A DNA stretch of 9,605 nucleotides, taken from the NCBI RefSeq assembly GCF_006345805.1, contig NW_021827878.1:1-9605 (forward strand). Reading direction: 5' to 3'. Position 1 is the first letter of the stretch. Every line of letters starts with the position of its first letter. Made by a program: the position numbers and the translations under genes. Shown here piece by piece: positions 176 to 9,605 of this stretch. A model generated the notes under the pieces. The model had not been told where the DNA came from, ran no database searches, and saw nothing but the letters and a program-made list of their open reading frames with translations. This DNA is from Octopus sinensis. Lineage: Eukaryota.

Positions 176-251
176 TCCATGTATGTATGTATGTTTGGAT
201 GGATGGATGTATGTATTTATGTATGTATGGATGGATGGATGGATACATGTG

Positions 252-283
<32 letters not shown>

Positions 284-419
284 TGTATGTATGTATTTGT
301 GTGTGTATGTATGCTTGTCTGTATGTATGTATATGTGTATGTCTCTATATATGTGTGTAAGCATGTAGTATGTGTATGGATGTGTGCATGTATGTATAAT
401 GTGTGTATTTGTATGTGTG
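176..419. repeat. Compound microsatellite (TATG)n/(TGGA)n/(TG)n
   Basis: Directly visible tetranucleotide and dinucleotide tracts; source of ORFs 113..433, 123..368 and most of 8..364. Confidence 0.95.
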
Positions 420-512
420 TGACTGAAGATTAGAGGCTTCGAATGACCCGTCCGTTTTTTTTGTATCGTCTATTTGAATGTTTTGCGTTCTTGTCCCATT
501 TTGTATTTTTAT
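420..512 (+). repeat. Direct repeat, copy 1
   Basis: tgactgaagattagaggcttcgaatgacccgtccg...cgttcttgtcccattttgtattttta; differs from copy 2 mainly in T-run lengths. Confidence 0.95.
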
Positions 513-1602: not shown

Positions 1603-1879
1603 GGGGACAGACCTATAGCTTTAAACAAACGATATATTAGTTAATTGCTTAGATAACTTATCAATAGACAGGTAATAAAGAAGTGAAACTGAACCAGCGC
1701 ATGTGTTTATTATTCACGTAATGACCTTCCCTGGCAACAAGATTTGTTTCAACACACGAGTTGATATTAATAATCTTGCAAACCAAATAGAAAAACGAAA
1801 TGTGTGTGTGTATGTGTGTTCATGATATGTATGTTTATATACATGTGTGTGTGTGAGTGCGCGTGTATATATATATATG

Positions 1880-2572
1880 GGATCTTTACCTTTTGACCGA
1901 CAGTTTTAAAAAATAATTTCTTGTAACTGAATACTTTCAAACTTCGGACACTGGTAGAATGTGTCATATAAAACATCTTCGCATTTTTGAGAAAAAAACA
2001 TATTTACGAAGTAATTTCACGTTAAAGTTGTCCTATTTCGGTAATTTCTATCAATCAATGACGTGTATTCAGCTGAATAAAATTACTGCTGTTGTTTGTC
2101 AACAATAACTTCCGGCGGTGTATATTTCGTTTGTCACTGTTATTTATGACAACCCTAACCCTAAAACCCTAACCTAACCCTATCATCCTAACCCTAACCC
2201 TAAAACCCTAACCCTAAAACCCTAACCCTAACCCTAACCCTAACCCTAACCCTAAAACATTAAAGCTAAAACCAGTACAAAAGCACAAATGACGTCATAA
2301 ATAACAGTGACAAACGAAAAATACACTGCCGATAGTTGTTGTTGACAAACAACGGCAGTAATTTTATTCAGCTGAATACACGTCATTGATTGGTTGAAAT
2401 TACCGAAATACGACTACTTTAACATGAAATAACTTCGCAAATATAAGTTTTTCTCAAAAATGCTAAGAGTAAAAGATGTTTTATATGACACATTCTACCA
2501 GTGTCCGAAGTTTGAAAGTGTTTAGTTACAAAAAATTATTTTTTAAATCTGTACGTCAAAAGGTAAAGATCC
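1880..2572. mobile_element. Fold-back element: ~271/279 bp inverted arms around a telomere-like core
   Basis: Arms 1880-2150 and 2294-2572 are reverse complements (about 90% by eye, one ~8 nt indel). Both begin GGATCTTTACCTTTTGAC, and both flanks are TA-rich. Confidence 0.9.
2151..2258. repeat. Interstitial telomere-like repeat (CCCTAA)n with CCCTAAAA variants
   Basis: Six perfect tandem CCCTAA units at 2220-2255 plus degenerate units upstream. TTAGGG is the common metazoan telomere repeat. Confidence 0.95.
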
Positions 2573-3077
2573 AATATATGTCCATAAAGTCGCAATGAAA
2601 TCTGTCATTCGCCTTTCCTGCATAACAGCTTTAAAATACTGTCACTAATAACACGCTGAATTAAAACCAAACATGACAGATTTTATTTAACGAGATACCC
2701 TTTATAACATCACCCGAGGAGATGCATCTACACCGAGGGATGCACCACAATCAGTTGTACATTATCCTACCCACAAGGAATCGATGCAGGATGCGTCGAA
2801 ACGATCGTTGTGAATAATAAAGCTTCTTGTATATCCATTTTCCCTTTCTGTTATTTGTTGTGTGTGTGTGTGTAGAATAGGTAGGGTTTAGGCTACTGGT
2901 AATCTAAGCTAATAAGTACGCTGCCTGAGTGGTCCACTTGATAAGCTACTAGGGTCCAAGTTCACAACGGGGGACTGGAATTAGGGATCCATAGCCTACT
3001 CACGAGTCAGCGGGTATAAATTAAAGGACGACGAAAAGAAAATCTCGGCAGGAAAAGCTTATCAGATCATTTAAATT

Positions 3078-3173
3078 AACGTTTTTTCAAACATTTTTTT
3101 TTTTTTGTCGCGACCCATTTTATTTACCTCGCACCCACTGAAGGGTTCAGGACCCACAGTTTGAAAAATGCTG
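3078..3173. mobile_element. Small hAT(Charlie)-like MITE remnant, copy 1
   Basis: Ends aacgttttttcaaac...gtttgaaaaatgctg are imperfect inverted repeats. The internal gtcgcgaccca and gacccacagtttga motifs resemble hAT/Charlie-type MITE termini. Confidence 0.5.
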
Positions 3174-3197
3174 GATATTCTGCATTTTGCACCCTCT

Positions 3198-3293
3198 TGC
3201 GTTTTTTTTTTTTTCTTTCTTTCCTTCATCTTGTCGTGACCTATTTTCTCACAACCCACTGAAGAGTCGGGAGCCAGAGTTTGAAAAATGCTG
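3198..3293. mobile_element. Small hAT(Charlie)-like MITE remnant, copy 2
   Basis: gtcgtgacctatttt...acccactgaagagtcgggagccagagtttgaaaaatgctg parallels 3107-3173. Confidence 0.45.
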
Positions 3294-3414
3294 ATGGCGA
3301 ATTATTTAAAGGATTTGATAAGCTTAGCTTGCCTTGATTTGTTTTCCTCTTCCTTTAAAACACACACACACACACACACACAGATATTTATATATACTTT
3401 ATTTAAAAGTAGCA

Positions 3415-3476
3415 GTTCCCGTTCGTCGGACAGTTTTGTTAAAACATTTTAACAAAACTGTCCGACGAACGGGAAC
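3415..3476. repeat. Perfect palindrome: 30 bp arms with a 2 nt loop
   Basis: gttcccgttcgtcggacagttttgttaaaa-ca-ttttaacaaaactgtccgacgaacgggaac. Confidence 0.98.
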
Positions 3477-3597: not shown

Positions 3598-3619
3598 GTA
3601 TATACATACATACATACAT

Positions 3620-3674
<55 letters not shown>

Positions 3675-3721
3675 ATATATGTATGTATGTATATATTGTA
3701 TGTATATATATATATATATAT

Positions 3722-3773
<52 letters not shown>

Positions 3774-3787
3774 TATAATATATATAT
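3598..3787. repeat. (TA)n/(TACA)n microsatellite
   Basis: Directly visible. Confidence 0.95.
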
Positions 3788-3998: not shown

Positions 3999-4296
3999 CC
4001 ATCTAAACACTAAAAACATGCAAGAATCCGCACATACCGTCACACGTATTCCACGTATACACACACACTCATATGTATTCAGACATACGTACATAAAACA
4101 TACACGCACCACTTTCTCACACACACTCACTCATGTATACAGACATACTTACATAAAACATACGCGCGCACACACACACTTACACACATAAAAATAACAA
4201 CACAGAATAGAGGATATAAGGCTTTGAAAGTAGATCACTACATTTGTTTCTGCATTGTACACCAGCATTAAGTTGTTGAGCGTGCATTCATATACC

Positions 4297-4824
4297 TATT
4301 TCTTTATTACCCACAAGGGGCTAAACATAGAAGGGACAAACAAGGACAGATATCGACCCCGAAAGGATGAATGGCAATGTCGACCTCGGTAGAATTTGAA
4401 CTCAGAACGTAACGCAGACGAAATACTATTTCTTTATTACCCACAAGGGGCTAAACACAGAGGGGACAAACAAGGACACAAACGGATTAAGTTGATTACA
4501 TCGACCCCAGTGCGTAACTGGTACTTAATTATCGACCCCGAAAGGAAATGGCATGTCGACCTCGGCAGAATTTGAACTCAGAACGTAGTGGCAGACGAAA
4601 TACCATTTCTTTATTATCCACAAGGGGCTAAACACATTGGGGACAAACAAGGACAGACTAGGTATTAAGTCGATTCACATCGACCCCAGTGCGTAACTGG
4701 TACTAATTTATCGACCCCGAAAGGATGAAAGGCAAAGTCGACCTCGGCGGAATTTGACTCACAACGTAACGGCAGACGAAATACCGCTAAGCATTTCGCC
4801 CGGCGTGCTAACGTTTCTGCCAGC
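4297..4824 (-). mobile_element. tRNA-derived SINE with a Nin/Deu-like central domain, as one head plus three tandem body units
   Basis: Head at 4785-4824 (A-box-like gctggcagaaacgttagc on the minus strand). Units are 4604-4784, 4427-4603 and 4297-4426 (the last with a ~50 bp internal deletion). The B-box-like gagttcaaattc is clear in two units and has a 1 nt deletion in the head-proximal unit. The core gtcgactttgcctttcatcctttcggggtcgataaatt-agtaccag resembles the Nin/Deu SINE domain. Confidence 0.85.
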
Positions 4825-5262: not shown

Positions 5263-5397
5263 TACAAGAATAATACAACACGAAGATGGAAGATATGAAA
5301 CTTTAATATGTATATTACATTTGTTTCTGCACCGTACACCAGCTTTAAGTCGCTGATTTTACATTTACCCTTATACAAGATCTTTATCATTAATATA

Positions 5398-5806
5398 CGG
5401 ATCTTTTCGGTTTGAACGGCAGTTTTTTAAAATAATTTCCACGTAACTAAACACTTTTAAACTTCGTATACTGGTAGAATGTGTTTATAAAACATCTTTT
5501 TATCTTGGCTTTATTGAGAAAATTCTATAGTTTGTAAGATATTTGTTGTTGTTTTTCTTCAATTTATGCAATTTCAACCAATCAATGACGTCTATTGAGG
5601 TGAAAACATTACATGCCGTATGTGTCCCTCGTTTAAGAAACAGATTGGGTTTATTTACATTTGTGAAGAAAAGAAAATACCCTTCCCCCCACCCATAACC
5701 CTAAAATAGATTGAAATGCAATAGATCGATACTAGGGTCATAATTATGGGTGACAATTTCATATGACACCGCTAGAAAAAACTGCCGTTCAAACCGAAAA
5801 GATCCG
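5398..5806. mobile_element. MITE with perfect 31 bp TIRs, related to the 1880-2572 element
   Basis: cggatcttttcggtttgaacggcagtttttt (5398-5428) is the exact reverse complement of 5776-5806. 5399-5592 aligns with the arm of 1880-2572. A cccataaccctaaaa remnant lies at ~5692-5706. Confidence 0.9.
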
Positions 5807-6198
5807 ATCTTTATAATTACTATACATTTGAATATACTCAATTTCCTAGCCTCAGGTCAGATCTCGTTGAACAAAGGTTTCCGAGCCGTAATCATTCCCA
5901 ACTGTTTTATACAAATTAGACAAATTGGATTATTTATATTAGGACTATATCGGCCAGTATTTCCTTTATTAACTTACCGTAGTGTGTGGTCAGAAAATTT
6001 GGCTTCTATTTCTAGCAGATGAGTGTCACATTTGCTTTTTGTTTCGTGTGTGAGTGTATACACTTATGGTGTCCCAAGACAAAGTAGAAATTATTTATAG
6101 ATGCTTTATACTCGAAAATCTGAAGATTACGGAACAGCGAATGCGAATGGGGACAGCAAAAATGTGTACACACACGCTAAAACATATTTATACATACA

Positions 6199-6393
<195 letters not shown>

Positions 6394-7055: not shown

Positions 7056-7304
7056 ATCTATATAATAGGGAACGAAAATGACAGTTCTAGAGACAGTGAA
7101 GAGGAGAGAGAGATTGTGAAAAAAAAAAACAAAGAATAGATATGCTTTTCTACCCCTCTCTCTCTCGCTTCACCACATTCTTGCAGTCCTCTCCACTTCT
7201 TCAGTTCTTCAGTTCTTCGCCTGCCTGCCTGACTGACTGTCTGCTCGCCAGCAGGGCAAAGCCGGCAGTTCGGCTGGACGGTCTGTCGGATGGTCTTTCA
7301 GCTT

Positions 7305-7471
7305 CGGTGATGATGATGATGATGATGATGGCGAAGATGTTGGTGACTGCGGCGTTGGTAGTGGTGGTGGTGGTGGTGGTGGTGGTGGTGGTGGTGGTAT
7401 TCGTAGACGCTGTTGATGGCGACGATGTGGGGGGGGAGGGGATGAGAGTTTTTAATGATGGTGCTGGTGCT

Positions 7472-7502
<31 letters not shown>

Positions 7503-7809
7503 ACGGTCACAACGGATGTGGTGTTACTGACGGTGTCGGTGTCGGTGGTGGTGGTGGTGGTGGTGGTGACGATGATCGTAGCTGCGGTGATGGTGGTGGT
7601 GGTGATGCTGTTGATGATGTTGACGTTGGCATGTGACATCGGCATCGGCAAGCAACGTCAGGCGGCTCGAACAGTCGCGTGAGGGGCACGCGCCGACTAC
7701 CGCCAATCCTTCCCCTCCCCTACCCTTCATCTTTCAGCCGTCTCCGGTTTAATACCACCACTATTGCTACTGCCACCACCACCACCACCACCACCAACAA
7801 CACCATCAG

Positions 7810-7846
<37 letters not shown>

Positions 7847-8275
7847 GCTAGCACCAACACCATCACCACAGTTACTACTACTACTACTACCATCACCACC
7901 ATCGCTGTTCTTGTTGTTACAACAACTACTGCTACCACCACCACCACCATCAGCAGCAGCAGCAGCAGCAGCATCATCATCATGATTATTACCACCCGTC
8001 GCCATCGACATCGCCGCCGCTGCTCGCTATTTGGTACTGGCCAACCAACTAACCAGCCAACCAGTCGATCTACCGACCGACCGACCGGCCGACCGTCCCA
8101 CCAACCCTTACTGTCACGATGACTCTAACTGCACCCTCACCTCTTACCACTACCACTACCACTGCCACTACTACTGCGGTTTAGTTTTTTTTTTTATTTG
8201 CTTATCGTCCCCTCCCCTTCCTTCTTCCTTCCTCGTCGTTAAAGCCTTTCGCTTTCTCCTCCTCCGCCTTCTTCT

Positions 8276-8315
<40 letters not shown>

Positions 8316-8614
8316 TGTTGTTCTTCGCTTCGCACAAAGATGTTGCCATCAGTTTCAATGTCGCTTGGTTGACAAGTTACAAACTGCTGGTCATAGAGAT
8401 GATGATGATGATGATGATGATGATGTTGATGACGATGGTGGTGGTGGTGGTGGTGGCGGTGGTGGTGGTGGTGGTGGTGAGCTGTTGCTGTTGTTAATTG
8501 TTATTGTTATTGTCGGTTAGTTCTCCCTCCCTCCCTTCCCACCACCACCACCACCACCACCACCCATCTAGATCAGACCTGATCGAACTGACTTCGTTAT
8601 CATCGTCTTCATCG

Positions 8615-8648
<34 letters not shown>

Positions 8649-9536
8649 TCAATCGTCATCGTCATCATTATCATTATCATTATTATTATGAAAGACCATT
8701 CCAGCCGCGACGATCCCGTTTTATTGTTAAATCTAGGACGTTTTAAAGACGGTAGGTGGTAGCATGGTTTAGTGGTGATGGTAGTAGTTGTGGTGGTGGT
8801 GGTGGTGGTGGTAGTGGTGGTCGTCGCCGTCGTGTTGACGGAGATAGCGGCGGACGTGGTAGCGGTGGTGGCGGGGGTTGGAGGTGGCGGCGGTAGTGGA
8901 AACGGTATCAGAGGTGCAGATGGCGGGTGGGGGGAACGGGGTAGGGGTGATATGAATGTTTATCTCTAGATCATGCCTTATATACAAAGACGCTCCAGCT
9001 GTGACCATCCCCTGTTTTTCTTTTTTTTTCTTTTCTTATATACAAACTACCCGGTTTCCACCCACCCACCCACCCACCGCCACCACAACCACCACCCACC
9101 GCCACCACAACCACCACCCACCCCACCACCACCACAACCACCCACCCCACCACCACCACCACCACCTTCAGGACTACATATCTAAACGGCTTGTCCTCCT
9201 TTTTTTTTTAGTCAGTGGACTATTATGTTTATCTGAGGTTCCGCTGTTATTTCTAACACGCTCGGCTTGTACCAGTTGCCATTATTTGCTGTCGATGGAG
9301 TCAAGCTCTTCCATCCGTGACCATCGTTCAGACTTGTACGAGGACTATATATATATATATATATTATGCTATGTATGTACGATGTCTTTTTGCATTTTGA
9401 AGACAGCTAGGCGGGGAGGGGGCGGCGGGTGTAGAGGAGCGGAATGGTGCGACTTGAGAGAGCTTTTAGCTACTACTTCTTGTAGATCGAGCGTTCTACA
9501 CAGAGGCTCTCTCGTTGATTGTGATGGTAATTTCTT

Positions 9537-9567
<31 letters not shown>

Positions 9568-9590
9568 AATAGGTAATAGTAGTAGTACCA
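7305..9590. repeat. Mosaic of trinucleotide microsatellites (GAT, GGT, GCT, ACC, ACT, AGC, CGT, CAT, CTA) separated by short unique spacers
   Basis: Directly visible blocks at about 7305-7625, 7752-7995, 8277-8318, 8398-8512, 8539-8690, 8768-8895, 9058-9166 and 9538-9570. Confidence 0.95.
7626..7750. promoter_or_regulatory. CpG-rich unique spacer, possible regulatory element
   Basis: High CpG density for this AT-rich window, with acgtca (CRE half-site) and gccaat (CCAAT) words. No transcript evidence. Confidence 0.2.
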
Positions 9591-9605
9591 GTGGTTGTAA
9601 TATAA

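What the first reader, a model, noticed from the sequence alone, without database searches (positions are those of the whole stretch)
1880..2572. Fold-back element with a telomere-repeat core
Two ~275 bp inverted arms enclose a 143 bp spacer, about three quarters of which is (CCCTAA)n. The array starts exactly where the left arm ends (2150/2151). As single-stranded DNA or RNA this gives a long hairpin whose loop could form a G-quadruplex on the TTAGGG strand, or bind telomere proteins. Possible readings (inference): a non-autonomous transposon that disperses interstitial telomere seeds, a telomerase-healed break captured inside a transposon, or an element that uses shelterin-like proteins. I cannot assign GGATCTTT termini to a named superfamily.
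Basis: partly seen in the sequence, partly recalled or inferred. Interest (0 to 1): 0.72.

Follow-up and report, generated by a model that had tools for sequence, protein, structure and literature searches.

The report
Old foldback transposon with telomere-like loop
This is a decayed, non-coding "foldback" jumping-gene copy with a stretch of telomere-type repeats in its hairpin loop, and a second, diverged copy 3 kb away has a worn-down remnant of the same repeats at the same spot, so the repeats seem to travel with the element.

Summary
Arms 1880-2150 and 2294-2572 are 91.5% complementary. They enclose a 143-nt spacer, and 105 nt of it (2151-2255) is a (CCCTAA)n-like array that starts exactly at the end of the left arm.

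The structure is not single-copy. A second family member lies at 5399-5805. It has perfect 30-nt terminal inverted repeats with the same GGATCTTT...CAG ends, a left arm about 73% identical to the copy-1 arms, and a right arm with an internal deletion. At 5679-5706 it carries a degenerate telomere-like tract, on the same strand and at the same distance from the left end as in copy 1 (281 vs 272 nt). This tract is the best telomere-like stretch in the window outside copy 1.

Copy 1 is flanked by a 7/8-bp direct repeat. No ORF in the element or elsewhere in the window has a Pfam domain.

Best reading: an old, non-autonomous TIR DNA transposon of foldback/MITE type, superfamily unassigned, that inherited a telomere-like tract in its loop. 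Copy 1 later re-expanded the tract by slippage. A telomerase repair scar as the origin of the tract is inferred, not shown. Nothing supports the shelterin idea.

The host genome could not be reached, so copy number, an autonomous partner and Dfam/Repbase status remain untested. Interest is moderate to low.

The parts
1880..2572 (+). Copy 1: complete foldback element, 693 bp
   Evidence: Inverted arms, hairpin fold and shared termini
1872..1879 (.). Candidate target-site duplication, left (TATATATG)
   Evidence: Matches 2573-2580 AATATATG at 7 of 8 positions, with an exact 7-mer ATATATG. It lies at the edge of a TA/TG microsatellite, so it is not conclusive.
1880..2150 (+). Copy 1 left arm, 271 nt; the terminal 24 nt GGATCTTTACCTTTTGACCGACAG form the TIR core
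   Evidence: nhmmer E 3e-88
2151..2255 (+). Telomere-type array, C-strand on +. It holds 13 perfect CCCTAA units, including 6 in a row at 2220-2255. Variants are CCCTAAAA (x4), CCTAA and CCCTATCAT. There is a 14-nt higher-order unit CCCTAACCCTAAAA.
   Evidence: G4 motif on the minus strand at 2192-2252
2256..2293 (+). Unique 38-nt rest of the loop. It ends in ATGAC, a direct repeat of the last 5 nt of the left arm.
   Evidence: no other match in the window; no Rfam match
2294..2572 (-). Copy 1 right arm, 279 nt
   Evidence: nhmmer E 3e-91
2573..2580 (.). Candidate target-site duplication, right (AATATATG)
5399..5805 (+). Copy 2: second family member, 407 bp, with its right arm internally deleted
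   Evidence: blastn 78-83% to the copy 1 arms; nhmmer E 3e-67; global alignment
5399..5428 (+). Copy 2 left TIR, GGATCTTTTCGGTTTGAACGGCAGTTTTTT
   Evidence: Read directly, it is 30/30 complementary to 5776-5805. The alignment covers 29 of these bases, because its right-hand slice stopped at 5804. One search confirms the first 24 bases.
5679..5706 (+). Copy 2 degenerate telomere-like tract ACCCTTCCCCCCACCCATAACCCTAAAA. It sits 281 nt from the left end and, like the copy 1 array, ends in AACCCTAAAA.
   Evidence: Top-scoring telomere-like 40-mer in the window outside copy 1 (25 vs 18 for the next). It holds the only other CCCTAACCCTAA-like match. Local alignment z 3.7. G4 motif on the minus strand at 5680-5701.
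5737..5772 (-). Copy 2 remnant of the inner end of the right arm (GTCATAATTATGGGTGACAA...CACCGC)
   Evidence: Its reverse complement aligns to copy 1 arm positions 235-271 and ends at the same ATGAC (z 2.2 alone). The colinear test of array end + unique + inner arm gives z 4.0, with 3/2000 shuffles and 0/1689 random places reaching the score.
5776..5805 (-). Copy 2 right TIR
5379..5398 (+). 20-nt direct repeat flanking copy 2, left (GATCTTTATCATTAATATAC)
   Evidence: 18/20 identical to 5806-5825; no other copy in the window; 0 expected by chance. Unexplained.
5806..5825 (+). 20-nt direct repeat flanking copy 2, right (GATCTTTATAATTACTATAC)

Best explanation
The feature is one old, inactive copy of a non-autonomous class II (TIR, cut-and-paste) transposon of the foldback/MITE type.

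A transposase encoded elsewhere would recognise the 24-30-nt ends (GGATCTTT[A/T]C..TTTGA.CG.CAG). It would excise the element and insert it with a staggered cut of about 7-8 bp.

The element consists of two long inverted arms of about 271 nt and a short non-coding loop. The loop carries a telomere-type (CCCTAA)n tract next to the left arm, followed by 30-40 nt of unique sequence. This layout was already present in the common ancestor of the two subfamilies seen in the window. The tract is therefore carried along as cargo, and each transposition seeds a short interstitial telomere-like, G4-prone tract.

In copy 1 the tract later grew and was partly homogenised by replication slippage. In the copy 2 lineage it decayed.

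For the first origin of the tract I commit to a telomerase-mediated repair scar at a break near the hairpin tip of a master copy. On the minus strand, the 3' end of the unique segment is followed by TTTTAGGG(TTAGGG)n, and the array is then joined to the inner end of the other arm.

Shown: the anatomy, two copies with sharp shared ends, a colinear loop layout, and no coding capacity.

Inferred: trans-mobilisation, TSD length, slippage growth, telomerase origin, and that the tract has no function for the element.
For: - All four termini match one 24-nt pattern with at most 2 mismatches, against 0.00 matches expected.
- Homology between the copies starts exactly at GGATC, and the flanks are unrelated.
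- Copy 1 is flanked by TATATATG / AATATATG.
- No ORF over 69 aa overlaps the element. Ten other ORFs in the window have no Pfam domain.
- Each copy's two ends match each other better than they match the other copy. At 53 sites L = R differs from copy 2, against 9 L-private and 6 R-private changes. This indicates two subfamilies, each with its own paired ends, and roughly symmetric neutral decay of the copy 1 arms.
- The telomere-like tract of copy 2 is at position 281, against 272 in copy 1, on the same strand. It is the top telomere-like segment of about 1,900 windows scanned on both strands and the only CCCTAACCCTAA-like hit outside copy 1.
- Both tracts end in AACCCTAAAA. The segment from array end through unique sequence to inner right arm is colinear in the two copies (z 4.0; 0/1689 random places reach the score).
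- Slippage is suggested by the 14-nt period scoring higher than the 6-nt period, and by the recurring unit CCCTAACCCTAAAA.
- Short telomeric arrays are documented as double-strand-break repair scars. This includes insertions inside repeats, and insertions with added random sequence or flank duplication (PMC2246262).
- Foldback transposons with a non-coding middle domain, and with no autonomous copy found, are documented (Tetris, PMC4079207).
Against: - There are only two copies, both in one 9.6-kb window. No sequence from the host genome could be obtained.
- The copy 2 tract is short and about 76-82% telomere-like. Its support comes from position and rank (roughly p < 0.01), not from a long alignment.
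- The unique loop segments of the two copies are not significantly similar on their own (z -0.1).
- The inner-arm remnant of copy 2 is weak on its own (z 2.2).
- The copy 1 TSD lies in TA-rich sequence and is only 7/8. Copy 2 has no 7-8-bp TSD and instead has an unexplained 20-nt flanking direct repeat.
- No transposase, and therefore no superfamily, is known for this element.
- The telomerase origin has no direct support. The junction shows at most 1-2 nt in register, and the window is full of ordinary microsatellites.
- The host, and so its telomere motif, is not established.
Confidence: 0.55

Rival explanations
1. This is the same transposon family, but the tract is not of telomeric origin. 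A C-rich loop sequence that happened to contain CCCTAA-like words (as in copy 2) acted as a proto-microsatellite. In copy 1 it expanded in place by replication slippage into something that only looks like a telomere array.
For: The window is extremely rich in microsatellites, with 31 TRF rows. The array has a 14-nt higher-order period and many variant units, which points to slippage or unequal exchange rather than processive telomerase synthesis. The copy 2 tract could be the unexpanded seed.
Against: The expanded unit is exactly the canonical TTAGGG/CCCTAA hexamer, with 13 perfect units. The copy 2 tract reads as about four decayed in-phase units rather than a single seed word. The variant CCCTAAAA also closes the tract in copy 2. 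These points are suggestive only.
Confidence: 0.22
2. The tract arose by recurrent, independent telomerase healing. The centre of a long palindrome is fragile. Each copy broke at its hairpin tip after insertion and was repaired separately with telomeric repeats, so the tract marks fragility rather than inheritance.
For: Interstitial telomeric sequences (ITSs) are documented repair scars at break sites, including inside repeats (PMC2246262). The spacer is flanked by a 5-nt ATGAC duplication, and without the spacer the centre would be the perfect palindrome ATGAC|GTCAT. This fits the 'duplication' and 'addition' classes in that paper.
Against: In both copies the tract has the same strand, lies on the same side of the loop, has the same closing AACCCTAAAA and is colinear with the following segment. 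Independent events should differ in orientation and junction. Copy 2 has perfect 30-nt TIRs, which suggests a younger insertion, yet its tract is the more decayed one. That fits a tract already old in its master copy.
Confidence: 0.1
3. This is not a mobile element. It is a local inverted duplication (palindrome) formed by fold-back repair or sister fusion at a telomere-healed chromosome break.
For: The structure is a long palindrome with telomere repeats at its centre.
Against: A second copy 2.8 kb away has the same ends and unrelated flanks. The centre is asymmetric: it has one orientation of repeats plus 38 unique nt, not head-to-head arrays. No microhomology is placed where fold-back priming would need it (read). 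Copy 1 has a flanking 7/8-bp duplication.
Confidence: 0.03
4. The structure is an assembly or sequencing artefact, such as a fold-back chimeric read.
For: Palindromic chimeras do occur in long-read data (general knowledge).
Against: The arms differ at 23 positions plus an 8-nt indel, with changes private to each arm. An artefact would give near-identical arms. A diverged second copy also exists.
Confidence: 0.02

Closest known systems
Foldback-type non-autonomous DNA transposons (Drosophila FB, Galileo, Tetris; Tm1 in root-knot nematodes)
   Same: Most of the element consists of very long inverted arms. It has a short non-coding middle domain of variable content, a flanking duplication in the 7-10-bp range and no transposase. 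Tetris is described in exactly these terms, with TSDs of 8-10 bp (PMC4079207).
   Different: The arms here are unique sequence without internal tandem subrepeats; TRF finds none in them. The element is much smaller, 0.4-0.7 kb. The middle domain is a telomere-type array. The GGATCTTT ends match no superfamily I can name from memory. [quoted passage not shown]
MITEs that carry or seed internal microsatellites or tandem repeats
   Same: It is a small, non-coding, TIR-bounded, multi-copy element whose interior holds a tandem repeat that varies in length between copies.
   Different: The repeat unit is the canonical telomere hexamer. The TIRs extend to about 270 nt in copy 1.
Short interstitial telomeric sequences (ITSs) inserted during double-strand-break repair (Nergadze et al. 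2007, PMC2246262)
   Same: The array is short, about 16 units of exact-hexamer repeats with a few variants. It lies inside a repetitive element and is accompanied by extra non-telomeric sequence and a small flank duplication. All of these classes are listed in that paper.
   Different: There the events are single-locus scars defined against empty orthologous sites. Here the tract appears to be inherited by a transposon family, and no empty site is available. No telomerase-RNA-like sequence was detected.
Retroelements with telomeric-repeat tails or telomere targeting (Penelope-like Athena/Coprina; TRAS/SART). From memory, not tested.
   Same: Mobile DNA is physically joined to telomere-type repeats.
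   Different: Those elements encode reverse transcriptase and carry the repeats at an end. This element has TIRs, no ORF, and repeats in the middle.

Membership tests
Non-autonomous TIR DNA transposon (MITE in the broad sense) | Terminal inverted repeats | tested here: met
   Copy 1: 24-nt ends with 2 mismatches, continuing into 271/279-nt arms. Copy 2: 30/30 perfect.
Non-autonomous TIR DNA transposon (MITE in the broad sense) | Target-site duplication of fixed length flanking each copy | tested here: inconclusive
   Copy 1: TATATATG / AATATATG, 7/8, in TA-rich sequence. Copy 2: no 7-9-bp TSD, but an 18/20 direct repeat of 20 nt.
Non-autonomous TIR DNA transposon (MITE in the broad sense) | Several dispersed copies whose homology ends exactly at the termini | tested here: met
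   There are two copies in the window with unrelated flanks. Genome-wide copy number is not testable with these tools.
Non-autonomous TIR DNA transposon (MITE in the broad sense) | No transposase gene; small size | tested here: met
   Sizes are 693 and 407 bp. Only short ORFs are present. The one arm ORF searched (49 aa) has no homologue. Ten other ORFs in the window have no Pfam domain.
Non-autonomous TIR DNA transposon (MITE in the broad sense) | An autonomous partner with the same termini | not testable with these tools
   The host genome is not in any reachable collection.
Foldback elements (FB/Galileo/Tetris type) | Long inverted arms that make up most of the element, around a middle domain | tested here: met
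   Copy 1 has 550 of 693 bp in its arms and a 143-nt middle domain. Copy 2 looks like a derivative with its right arm deleted.
Foldback elements (FB/Galileo/Tetris type) | Tandem subrepeats inside the arms | tested here: not met
   TRF and the repeat finder report no tandem repeats within 1880-2150 or 2294-2572.
hAT superfamily | 8-bp TSD and short TIRs beginning YARNG (from memory) | tested here: not met
   The TSD is compatible at 7/8, but the termini begin GGATC at all four ends. Transposase is not testable.
Mutator/MULE superfamily | 9-11-bp TSD and long TIRs (from memory; 8-10 bp for Tetris in PMC4079207) | tested here: inconclusive
   Long TIRs are present. The direct repeat at copy 1 does not extend beyond 8 bp. 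Transposase is not testable.
P superfamily (Galileo-like foldbacks) | 7-8-bp TSD; THAP-transposase binding sites in the arms | tested here: inconclusive
   The exact 7-bp repeat ATATATG fits. No shared subterminal motif emerged: TTCG/TTCGG enrichment is weak and absent in copy 2.
Short interstitial telomeric sequence (DSB-repair scar) | Short head-to-tail array of the host's telomere hexamer at a non-terminal site | tested here: met
   About 16 units with 13 perfect CCCTAA. That TTAGGG is the host's telomere repeat is assumed, because the host is unknown.
Short interstitial telomeric sequence (DSB-repair scar) | An empty ancestral or orthologous site, and break-site nucleotides in register with the repeats | not testable with these tools
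   No orthologous locus or family consensus is available. The junction GCTTTAATG|TTTTAGGG is uninformative.
Helitron/Helentron-derived tandem-repeat MITEs | No TIRs or TSD; 3' hairpin; insertion at A/T (from memory) | tested here: not met
   Long TIRs and a candidate TSD are present.

The most novel reading that the evidence does not exclude
The telomere-type tract is a maintained, functional part of this transposon family rather than cargo. For example, it could be a G-quadruplex or telomere-protein binding site at the hairpin tip that helps replication, excision or nuclear targeting. It could also make the family a major genome-wide source of interstitial telomeric sites and fragile or recombination-prone spots. 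In this reading both subfamilies keep a G4-capable tract in the loop because it is selected.
Probability: 0.08. Interest if true: 0.65.

Novelty: new member of a known kind. Interest (0 to 1): 0.35.

Why it matters
How interstitial telomeric sequences arise and spread is still debated. The candidates are chromosome fusion, break repair by telomerase, and carriage by mobile elements. The review PMC6410037 lists carriage by mobile elements only as a possibility.

A transposon family that carries a telomere-type tract in a fixed internal position would be a clean, countable example of that third route. Each insertion would seed a G4-prone, possibly telomere-protein-binding site inside a long hairpin, which is a doubly fragile structure.

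With the host genome in hand this becomes a simple census. On present evidence it is an ordinary decayed foldback MITE with an unusual passenger, and it has no demonstrated function.

Tried and rejected
1. Other copies through proteins. The 49-aa arm ORF and a 64-aa ORF from the 177-bp repeat gave no homologues. Ten window ORFs are not in the exact-sequence collection. The protein collections evidently do not cover this host's non-coding DNA.

2. Other copies through DNA. A 23-mer from the arms found nothing in metagenome, prokaryote-genome and viral contigs, and a 20-mer found nothing in metagenome and prokaryote-genome contigs.

3. RNA families. Rfam gave only sub-threshold miRNA-like hits on microsatellites. 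Nothing matched in or around the loop, and no telomerase-RNA family matched. No tRNA was found.

4. Host identification. A search for the 177-bp repeat sequence in papers gave 0 hits. My recollection that it resembles a cephalopod SINE stays unverified.

5. Subterminal transposase-binding motifs. TTCG/TTCGG are mildly enriched in the copy 1 arms (P about 0.02) but not in copy 2. I rejected this as evidence.

6. Fold-back priming or template switching as the origin of the right arm. The bases next to the arm/loop junctions do not provide the required complementarity (read). The second copy makes this reading unnecessary.

7. Two head-to-head insertions. No internal GGATCTTT/AAAGATCC remnant exists in the centre.

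8. Literature. Five searches found no paper describing a MITE or foldback family with telomere repeats in its loop. This covers only the held open-access library and is not proof of novelty.

Full report
OBSERVATION

The arms are 1880-2150 (271 nt) and 2294-2572 (279 nt, with one extra 8 nt). They are inverted copies, 91.5% identical over aligned positions (K2P 0.09). The spacer 2151-2293 is 143 nt. TRF reports an AACCCT array at 2151-2255 with 16.3 units, 81% matches and 16% indels. The array starts at the base after the left arm. It contains 13 perfect CCCTAA units, six of them consecutive at 2220-2255. Variant units are CCCTAAAA (x4), CCTAA and CCCTATCAT. The remaining 38 nt (2256-2293) are unique in the window. 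As a single strand the element folds into one hairpin of -245 kcal/mol (z -36.6 against shuffles), with the whole spacer as the loop. The minus strand of the loop matches a G-quadruplex motif. The window itself is non-coding, microsatellite-rich eukaryotic DNA. It has no tRNA, no Rfam family above threshold and no Pfam domain in ten ORFs.

A self-BLAST of the element against the window found a second, diverged copy at 5399-5805. A profile of the arms confirmed it (nhmmer E 3e-67).

- Copy 2 begins GGATCTTTTCGGTTTGAACGGCAGTTTTTT and ends with the perfect reverse complement of those 30 nt.
- A 24-nt degenerate pattern of the termini matches exactly four places in the window, the four ends of the two copies, against 0.00 expected.
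- Homology between the copies begins exactly at GGATC, and the flanks are unrelated. This is the signature of a mobile element rather than a local duplication.
- The left arm of copy 2 is about 73% identical to both copy 1 arms (K2P about 0.33).
- At 53 aligned sites the two copy 1 arms agree with each other and differ from copy 2. Only 9 changes are private to the left arm and 6 to the right arm.
- The two copies therefore represent two subfamilies, each with its own matched ends. The copy 1 arms have decayed roughly symmetrically since a common origin.
- The right half of copy 2 is shortened. After the loop come about 36 nt (5737-5772) whose reverse complement aligns to positions 235-271 of the copy 1 arm and ends at the same ATGAC boundary. 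The 30-nt TIR then follows. About 200 nt of the right arm appear to have been deleted. This remnant is weak on its own (z 2.2).

THE CORE IS SHARED

Copy 2 carries ACCCTTCCCCCCACCCATAACCCTAAAA at 5679-5706. This is on the same strand as the copy 1 array and 281 nt from the left terminus, against 272 nt in copy 1.

- I scored every 40-nt window on both strands against (CCCTAA)n. This stretch is the best in the whole window outside copy 1, scoring 25 against 18 for the next.
- It also holds the only CCCTAACCCTAA-like match (up to 2 mismatches) outside copy 1, where 0.64 matches are expected in the entire window.
- The chance that the single best telomere-like stretch falls in the roughly 110-nt interior of copy 2 in the right orientation is well below 1%.
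- Both tracts end in AACCCTAAAA.
- The segment from array end through unique sequence to inner right arm is colinear between the copies (global score 41, z 4.0). Three of 2000 shuffles and 0 of 1689 random places in the window reach that score.
- The unique parts alone are not significantly similar (z -0.1).
- Both loops carry a G4 motif on the minus strand. Only three other G4 motifs occur in the window.

I conclude, with moderate confidence, that a telomere-like tract next to the left arm was already part of the element before the two subfamilies split.

INSERTION SIGNATURES

Copy 1 is flanked by TATATATG (1872-1879) and AATATATG (2573-2580). This is 7 of 8, with an exact 7-mer, at the edge of a TA/TG microsatellite. 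It suggests a 7-8-bp TSD but is not conclusive in such sequence.

Copy 2 has no such TSD. It is instead flanked by a 20-nt direct repeat: GATCTTTATCATTAATATAC and GATCTTTATAATTACTATAC, 18/20 identical, found nowhere else in the window, with 0 expected. I cannot explain this. The last 8 nt of each repeat (TAATATAC / TACTATAC) resemble the AT-rich target of copy 1.

HOW IT MOST LIKELY WORKS

This is a non-autonomous cut-and-paste transposon of foldback/MITE type. It would be mobilised in trans through its 24-30-nt ends and now appears inactive at copy 1, whose arms are 8.5% diverged. The perfect TIRs of copy 2 suggest a younger insertion. If it were as old as copy 1, 0 differences in 30 nt has a probability of about 0.07.

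The more recently inserted copy has the more decayed tract. This fits a tract that was already old in that copy's master element. It also fits secondary re-expansion in copy 1. That is consistent with the 14-nt period scoring above the 6-nt period and with the recurring unit CCCTAACCCTAAAA, both typical of slippage or unequal exchange.

For the first origin I favour a telomerase-mediated repair scar near the hairpin tip. On the minus strand the unique segment is followed by TTTTAGGG(TTAGGG)n, and the array is then joined to the inner end of the other arm. The spacer is bracketed by a 5-nt ATGAC duplication, and without the spacer the centre would read ATGAC|GTCAT. Nergadze et al. document short telomeric arrays inserted at breaks, including inside repeats, with added random sequence, flank duplications and even telomerase-RNA fragments (PMC2246262). 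This step is inference only.

The main alternative is that a chance CCCTAA-like seed grew as an ordinary microsatellite in a genome that makes many of them. Independent healing of each copy is less likely, given the shared strand, side, closing unit and colinearity. A non-mobile palindrome and an assembly artefact are essentially excluded by copy 2 and by the divergence between the arms.

COMPARISON WITH KNOWN ELEMENTS

The architecture is that of foldback transposons such as FB, Galileo and Tetris: long inverted arms, a non-coding middle domain, TSDs of 7-10 bp, and often no autonomous copy found (PMC4079207).

It differs in several ways. The arms are unique sequence without tandem subrepeats. 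The element is small. The middle domain is a telomere-type array. The GGATC termini do not fit the hAT terminal consensus. The TSD length is compatible with the P, hAT, Merlin or short-TSD MULE ranges (from memory). Without a transposase no superfamily can be assigned.

I found no paper in the held library describing a MITE or foldback family with telomere repeats in its loop. [quoted passage not shown] Dfam and Repbase could not be consulted.

LIMITS

No sequence from the host genome could be reached. The DNA collections are prokaryotic, viral or metagenomic and gave no hits. The protein collections hold nothing from this locus or from its abundant repeats. All family-level inference therefore rests on two copies 2.8 kb apart. 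Finding a second copy that close hints that the family is abundant, but this is not a measurement. The host, and hence its telomere motif, is not established.

VERDICT

This is a new, unclassified member of a known kind of element with an unusual passenger sequence. Interest is moderate to low unless a genome-wide census shows that the tract is a conserved family feature.

Noticed in passing
window 5379-5398 and 5806-5825: Copy 2 is bracketed by a 20-nt direct repeat (18/20 identical) instead of a 7-8-bp TSD. The repeat begins GATCTTTAT, which resembles the element's own terminus GGATCTTTA. It could be an unusually long duplication, an insertion into a relative's end, or a repair product.
   Followed up: partly
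window 3415-3476: A perfect 62-nt palindrome: 30-nt arms GTTCCCGTTCGTCGGACAGTTTTGTTAAAA and a 2-nt loop. It is weakly similar to the subterminal part of the family's TIR (..CGGACAGTTTT..AAAA; nhmmer E 0.08). Rfam gives sub-threshold miRNA-like hits here. It may be a miniature relative, or it may be unrelated.
   Followed up: partly
window 4284-4785: A 177-nt unit is repeated 2.4 times in tandem (88% matches), and a further 65-nt piece lies at 4284-4348 (family D18). It looks like a SINE-type repeat. From memory it resembles an abundant cephalopod SINE, but no tool confirmed this.
   Followed up: partly
window ~3093-3176 and ~3205-3296: Two adjacent copies of a repeat of about 90-110 nt. Each starts with a T-run and ends ..CCCACTGAAG.GT..GGA.CCA.AGTTTGAAAAATGCTG. 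Seen by eye.
   Followed up: no
window 7140-9605: A GC-richer block (47-57% GC) is built almost entirely of trinucleotide arrays: GGT/GAT/GCT on one side and CCA/CTA/CAG on the other. Together they form long imperfect inverted repeats (I16, I24, I25). Its long ORFs are low-complexity artefacts.
   Followed up: no
window 179-420, 1378-1462, 3599-3787, 6199-6387, 779-907: Microsatellite load is very high: (ATGT)62, (TA)44, (TA)97 and (TATC)47, plus a 33/42-nt CT-rich minisatellite. This matters when judging whether the telomere-like array could be an ordinary microsatellite.
   Followed up: partly
window 2059-2085 and 2359-2385; copy 2 5576-5592: The best-conserved block in all three arms is CAATCAATGACGT. 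In copy 1 it is followed by the 14-nt palindrome TATTCAGCTGAATA. It could be a protein-binding site, but there is no statistical support beyond conservation.
   Followed up: partly
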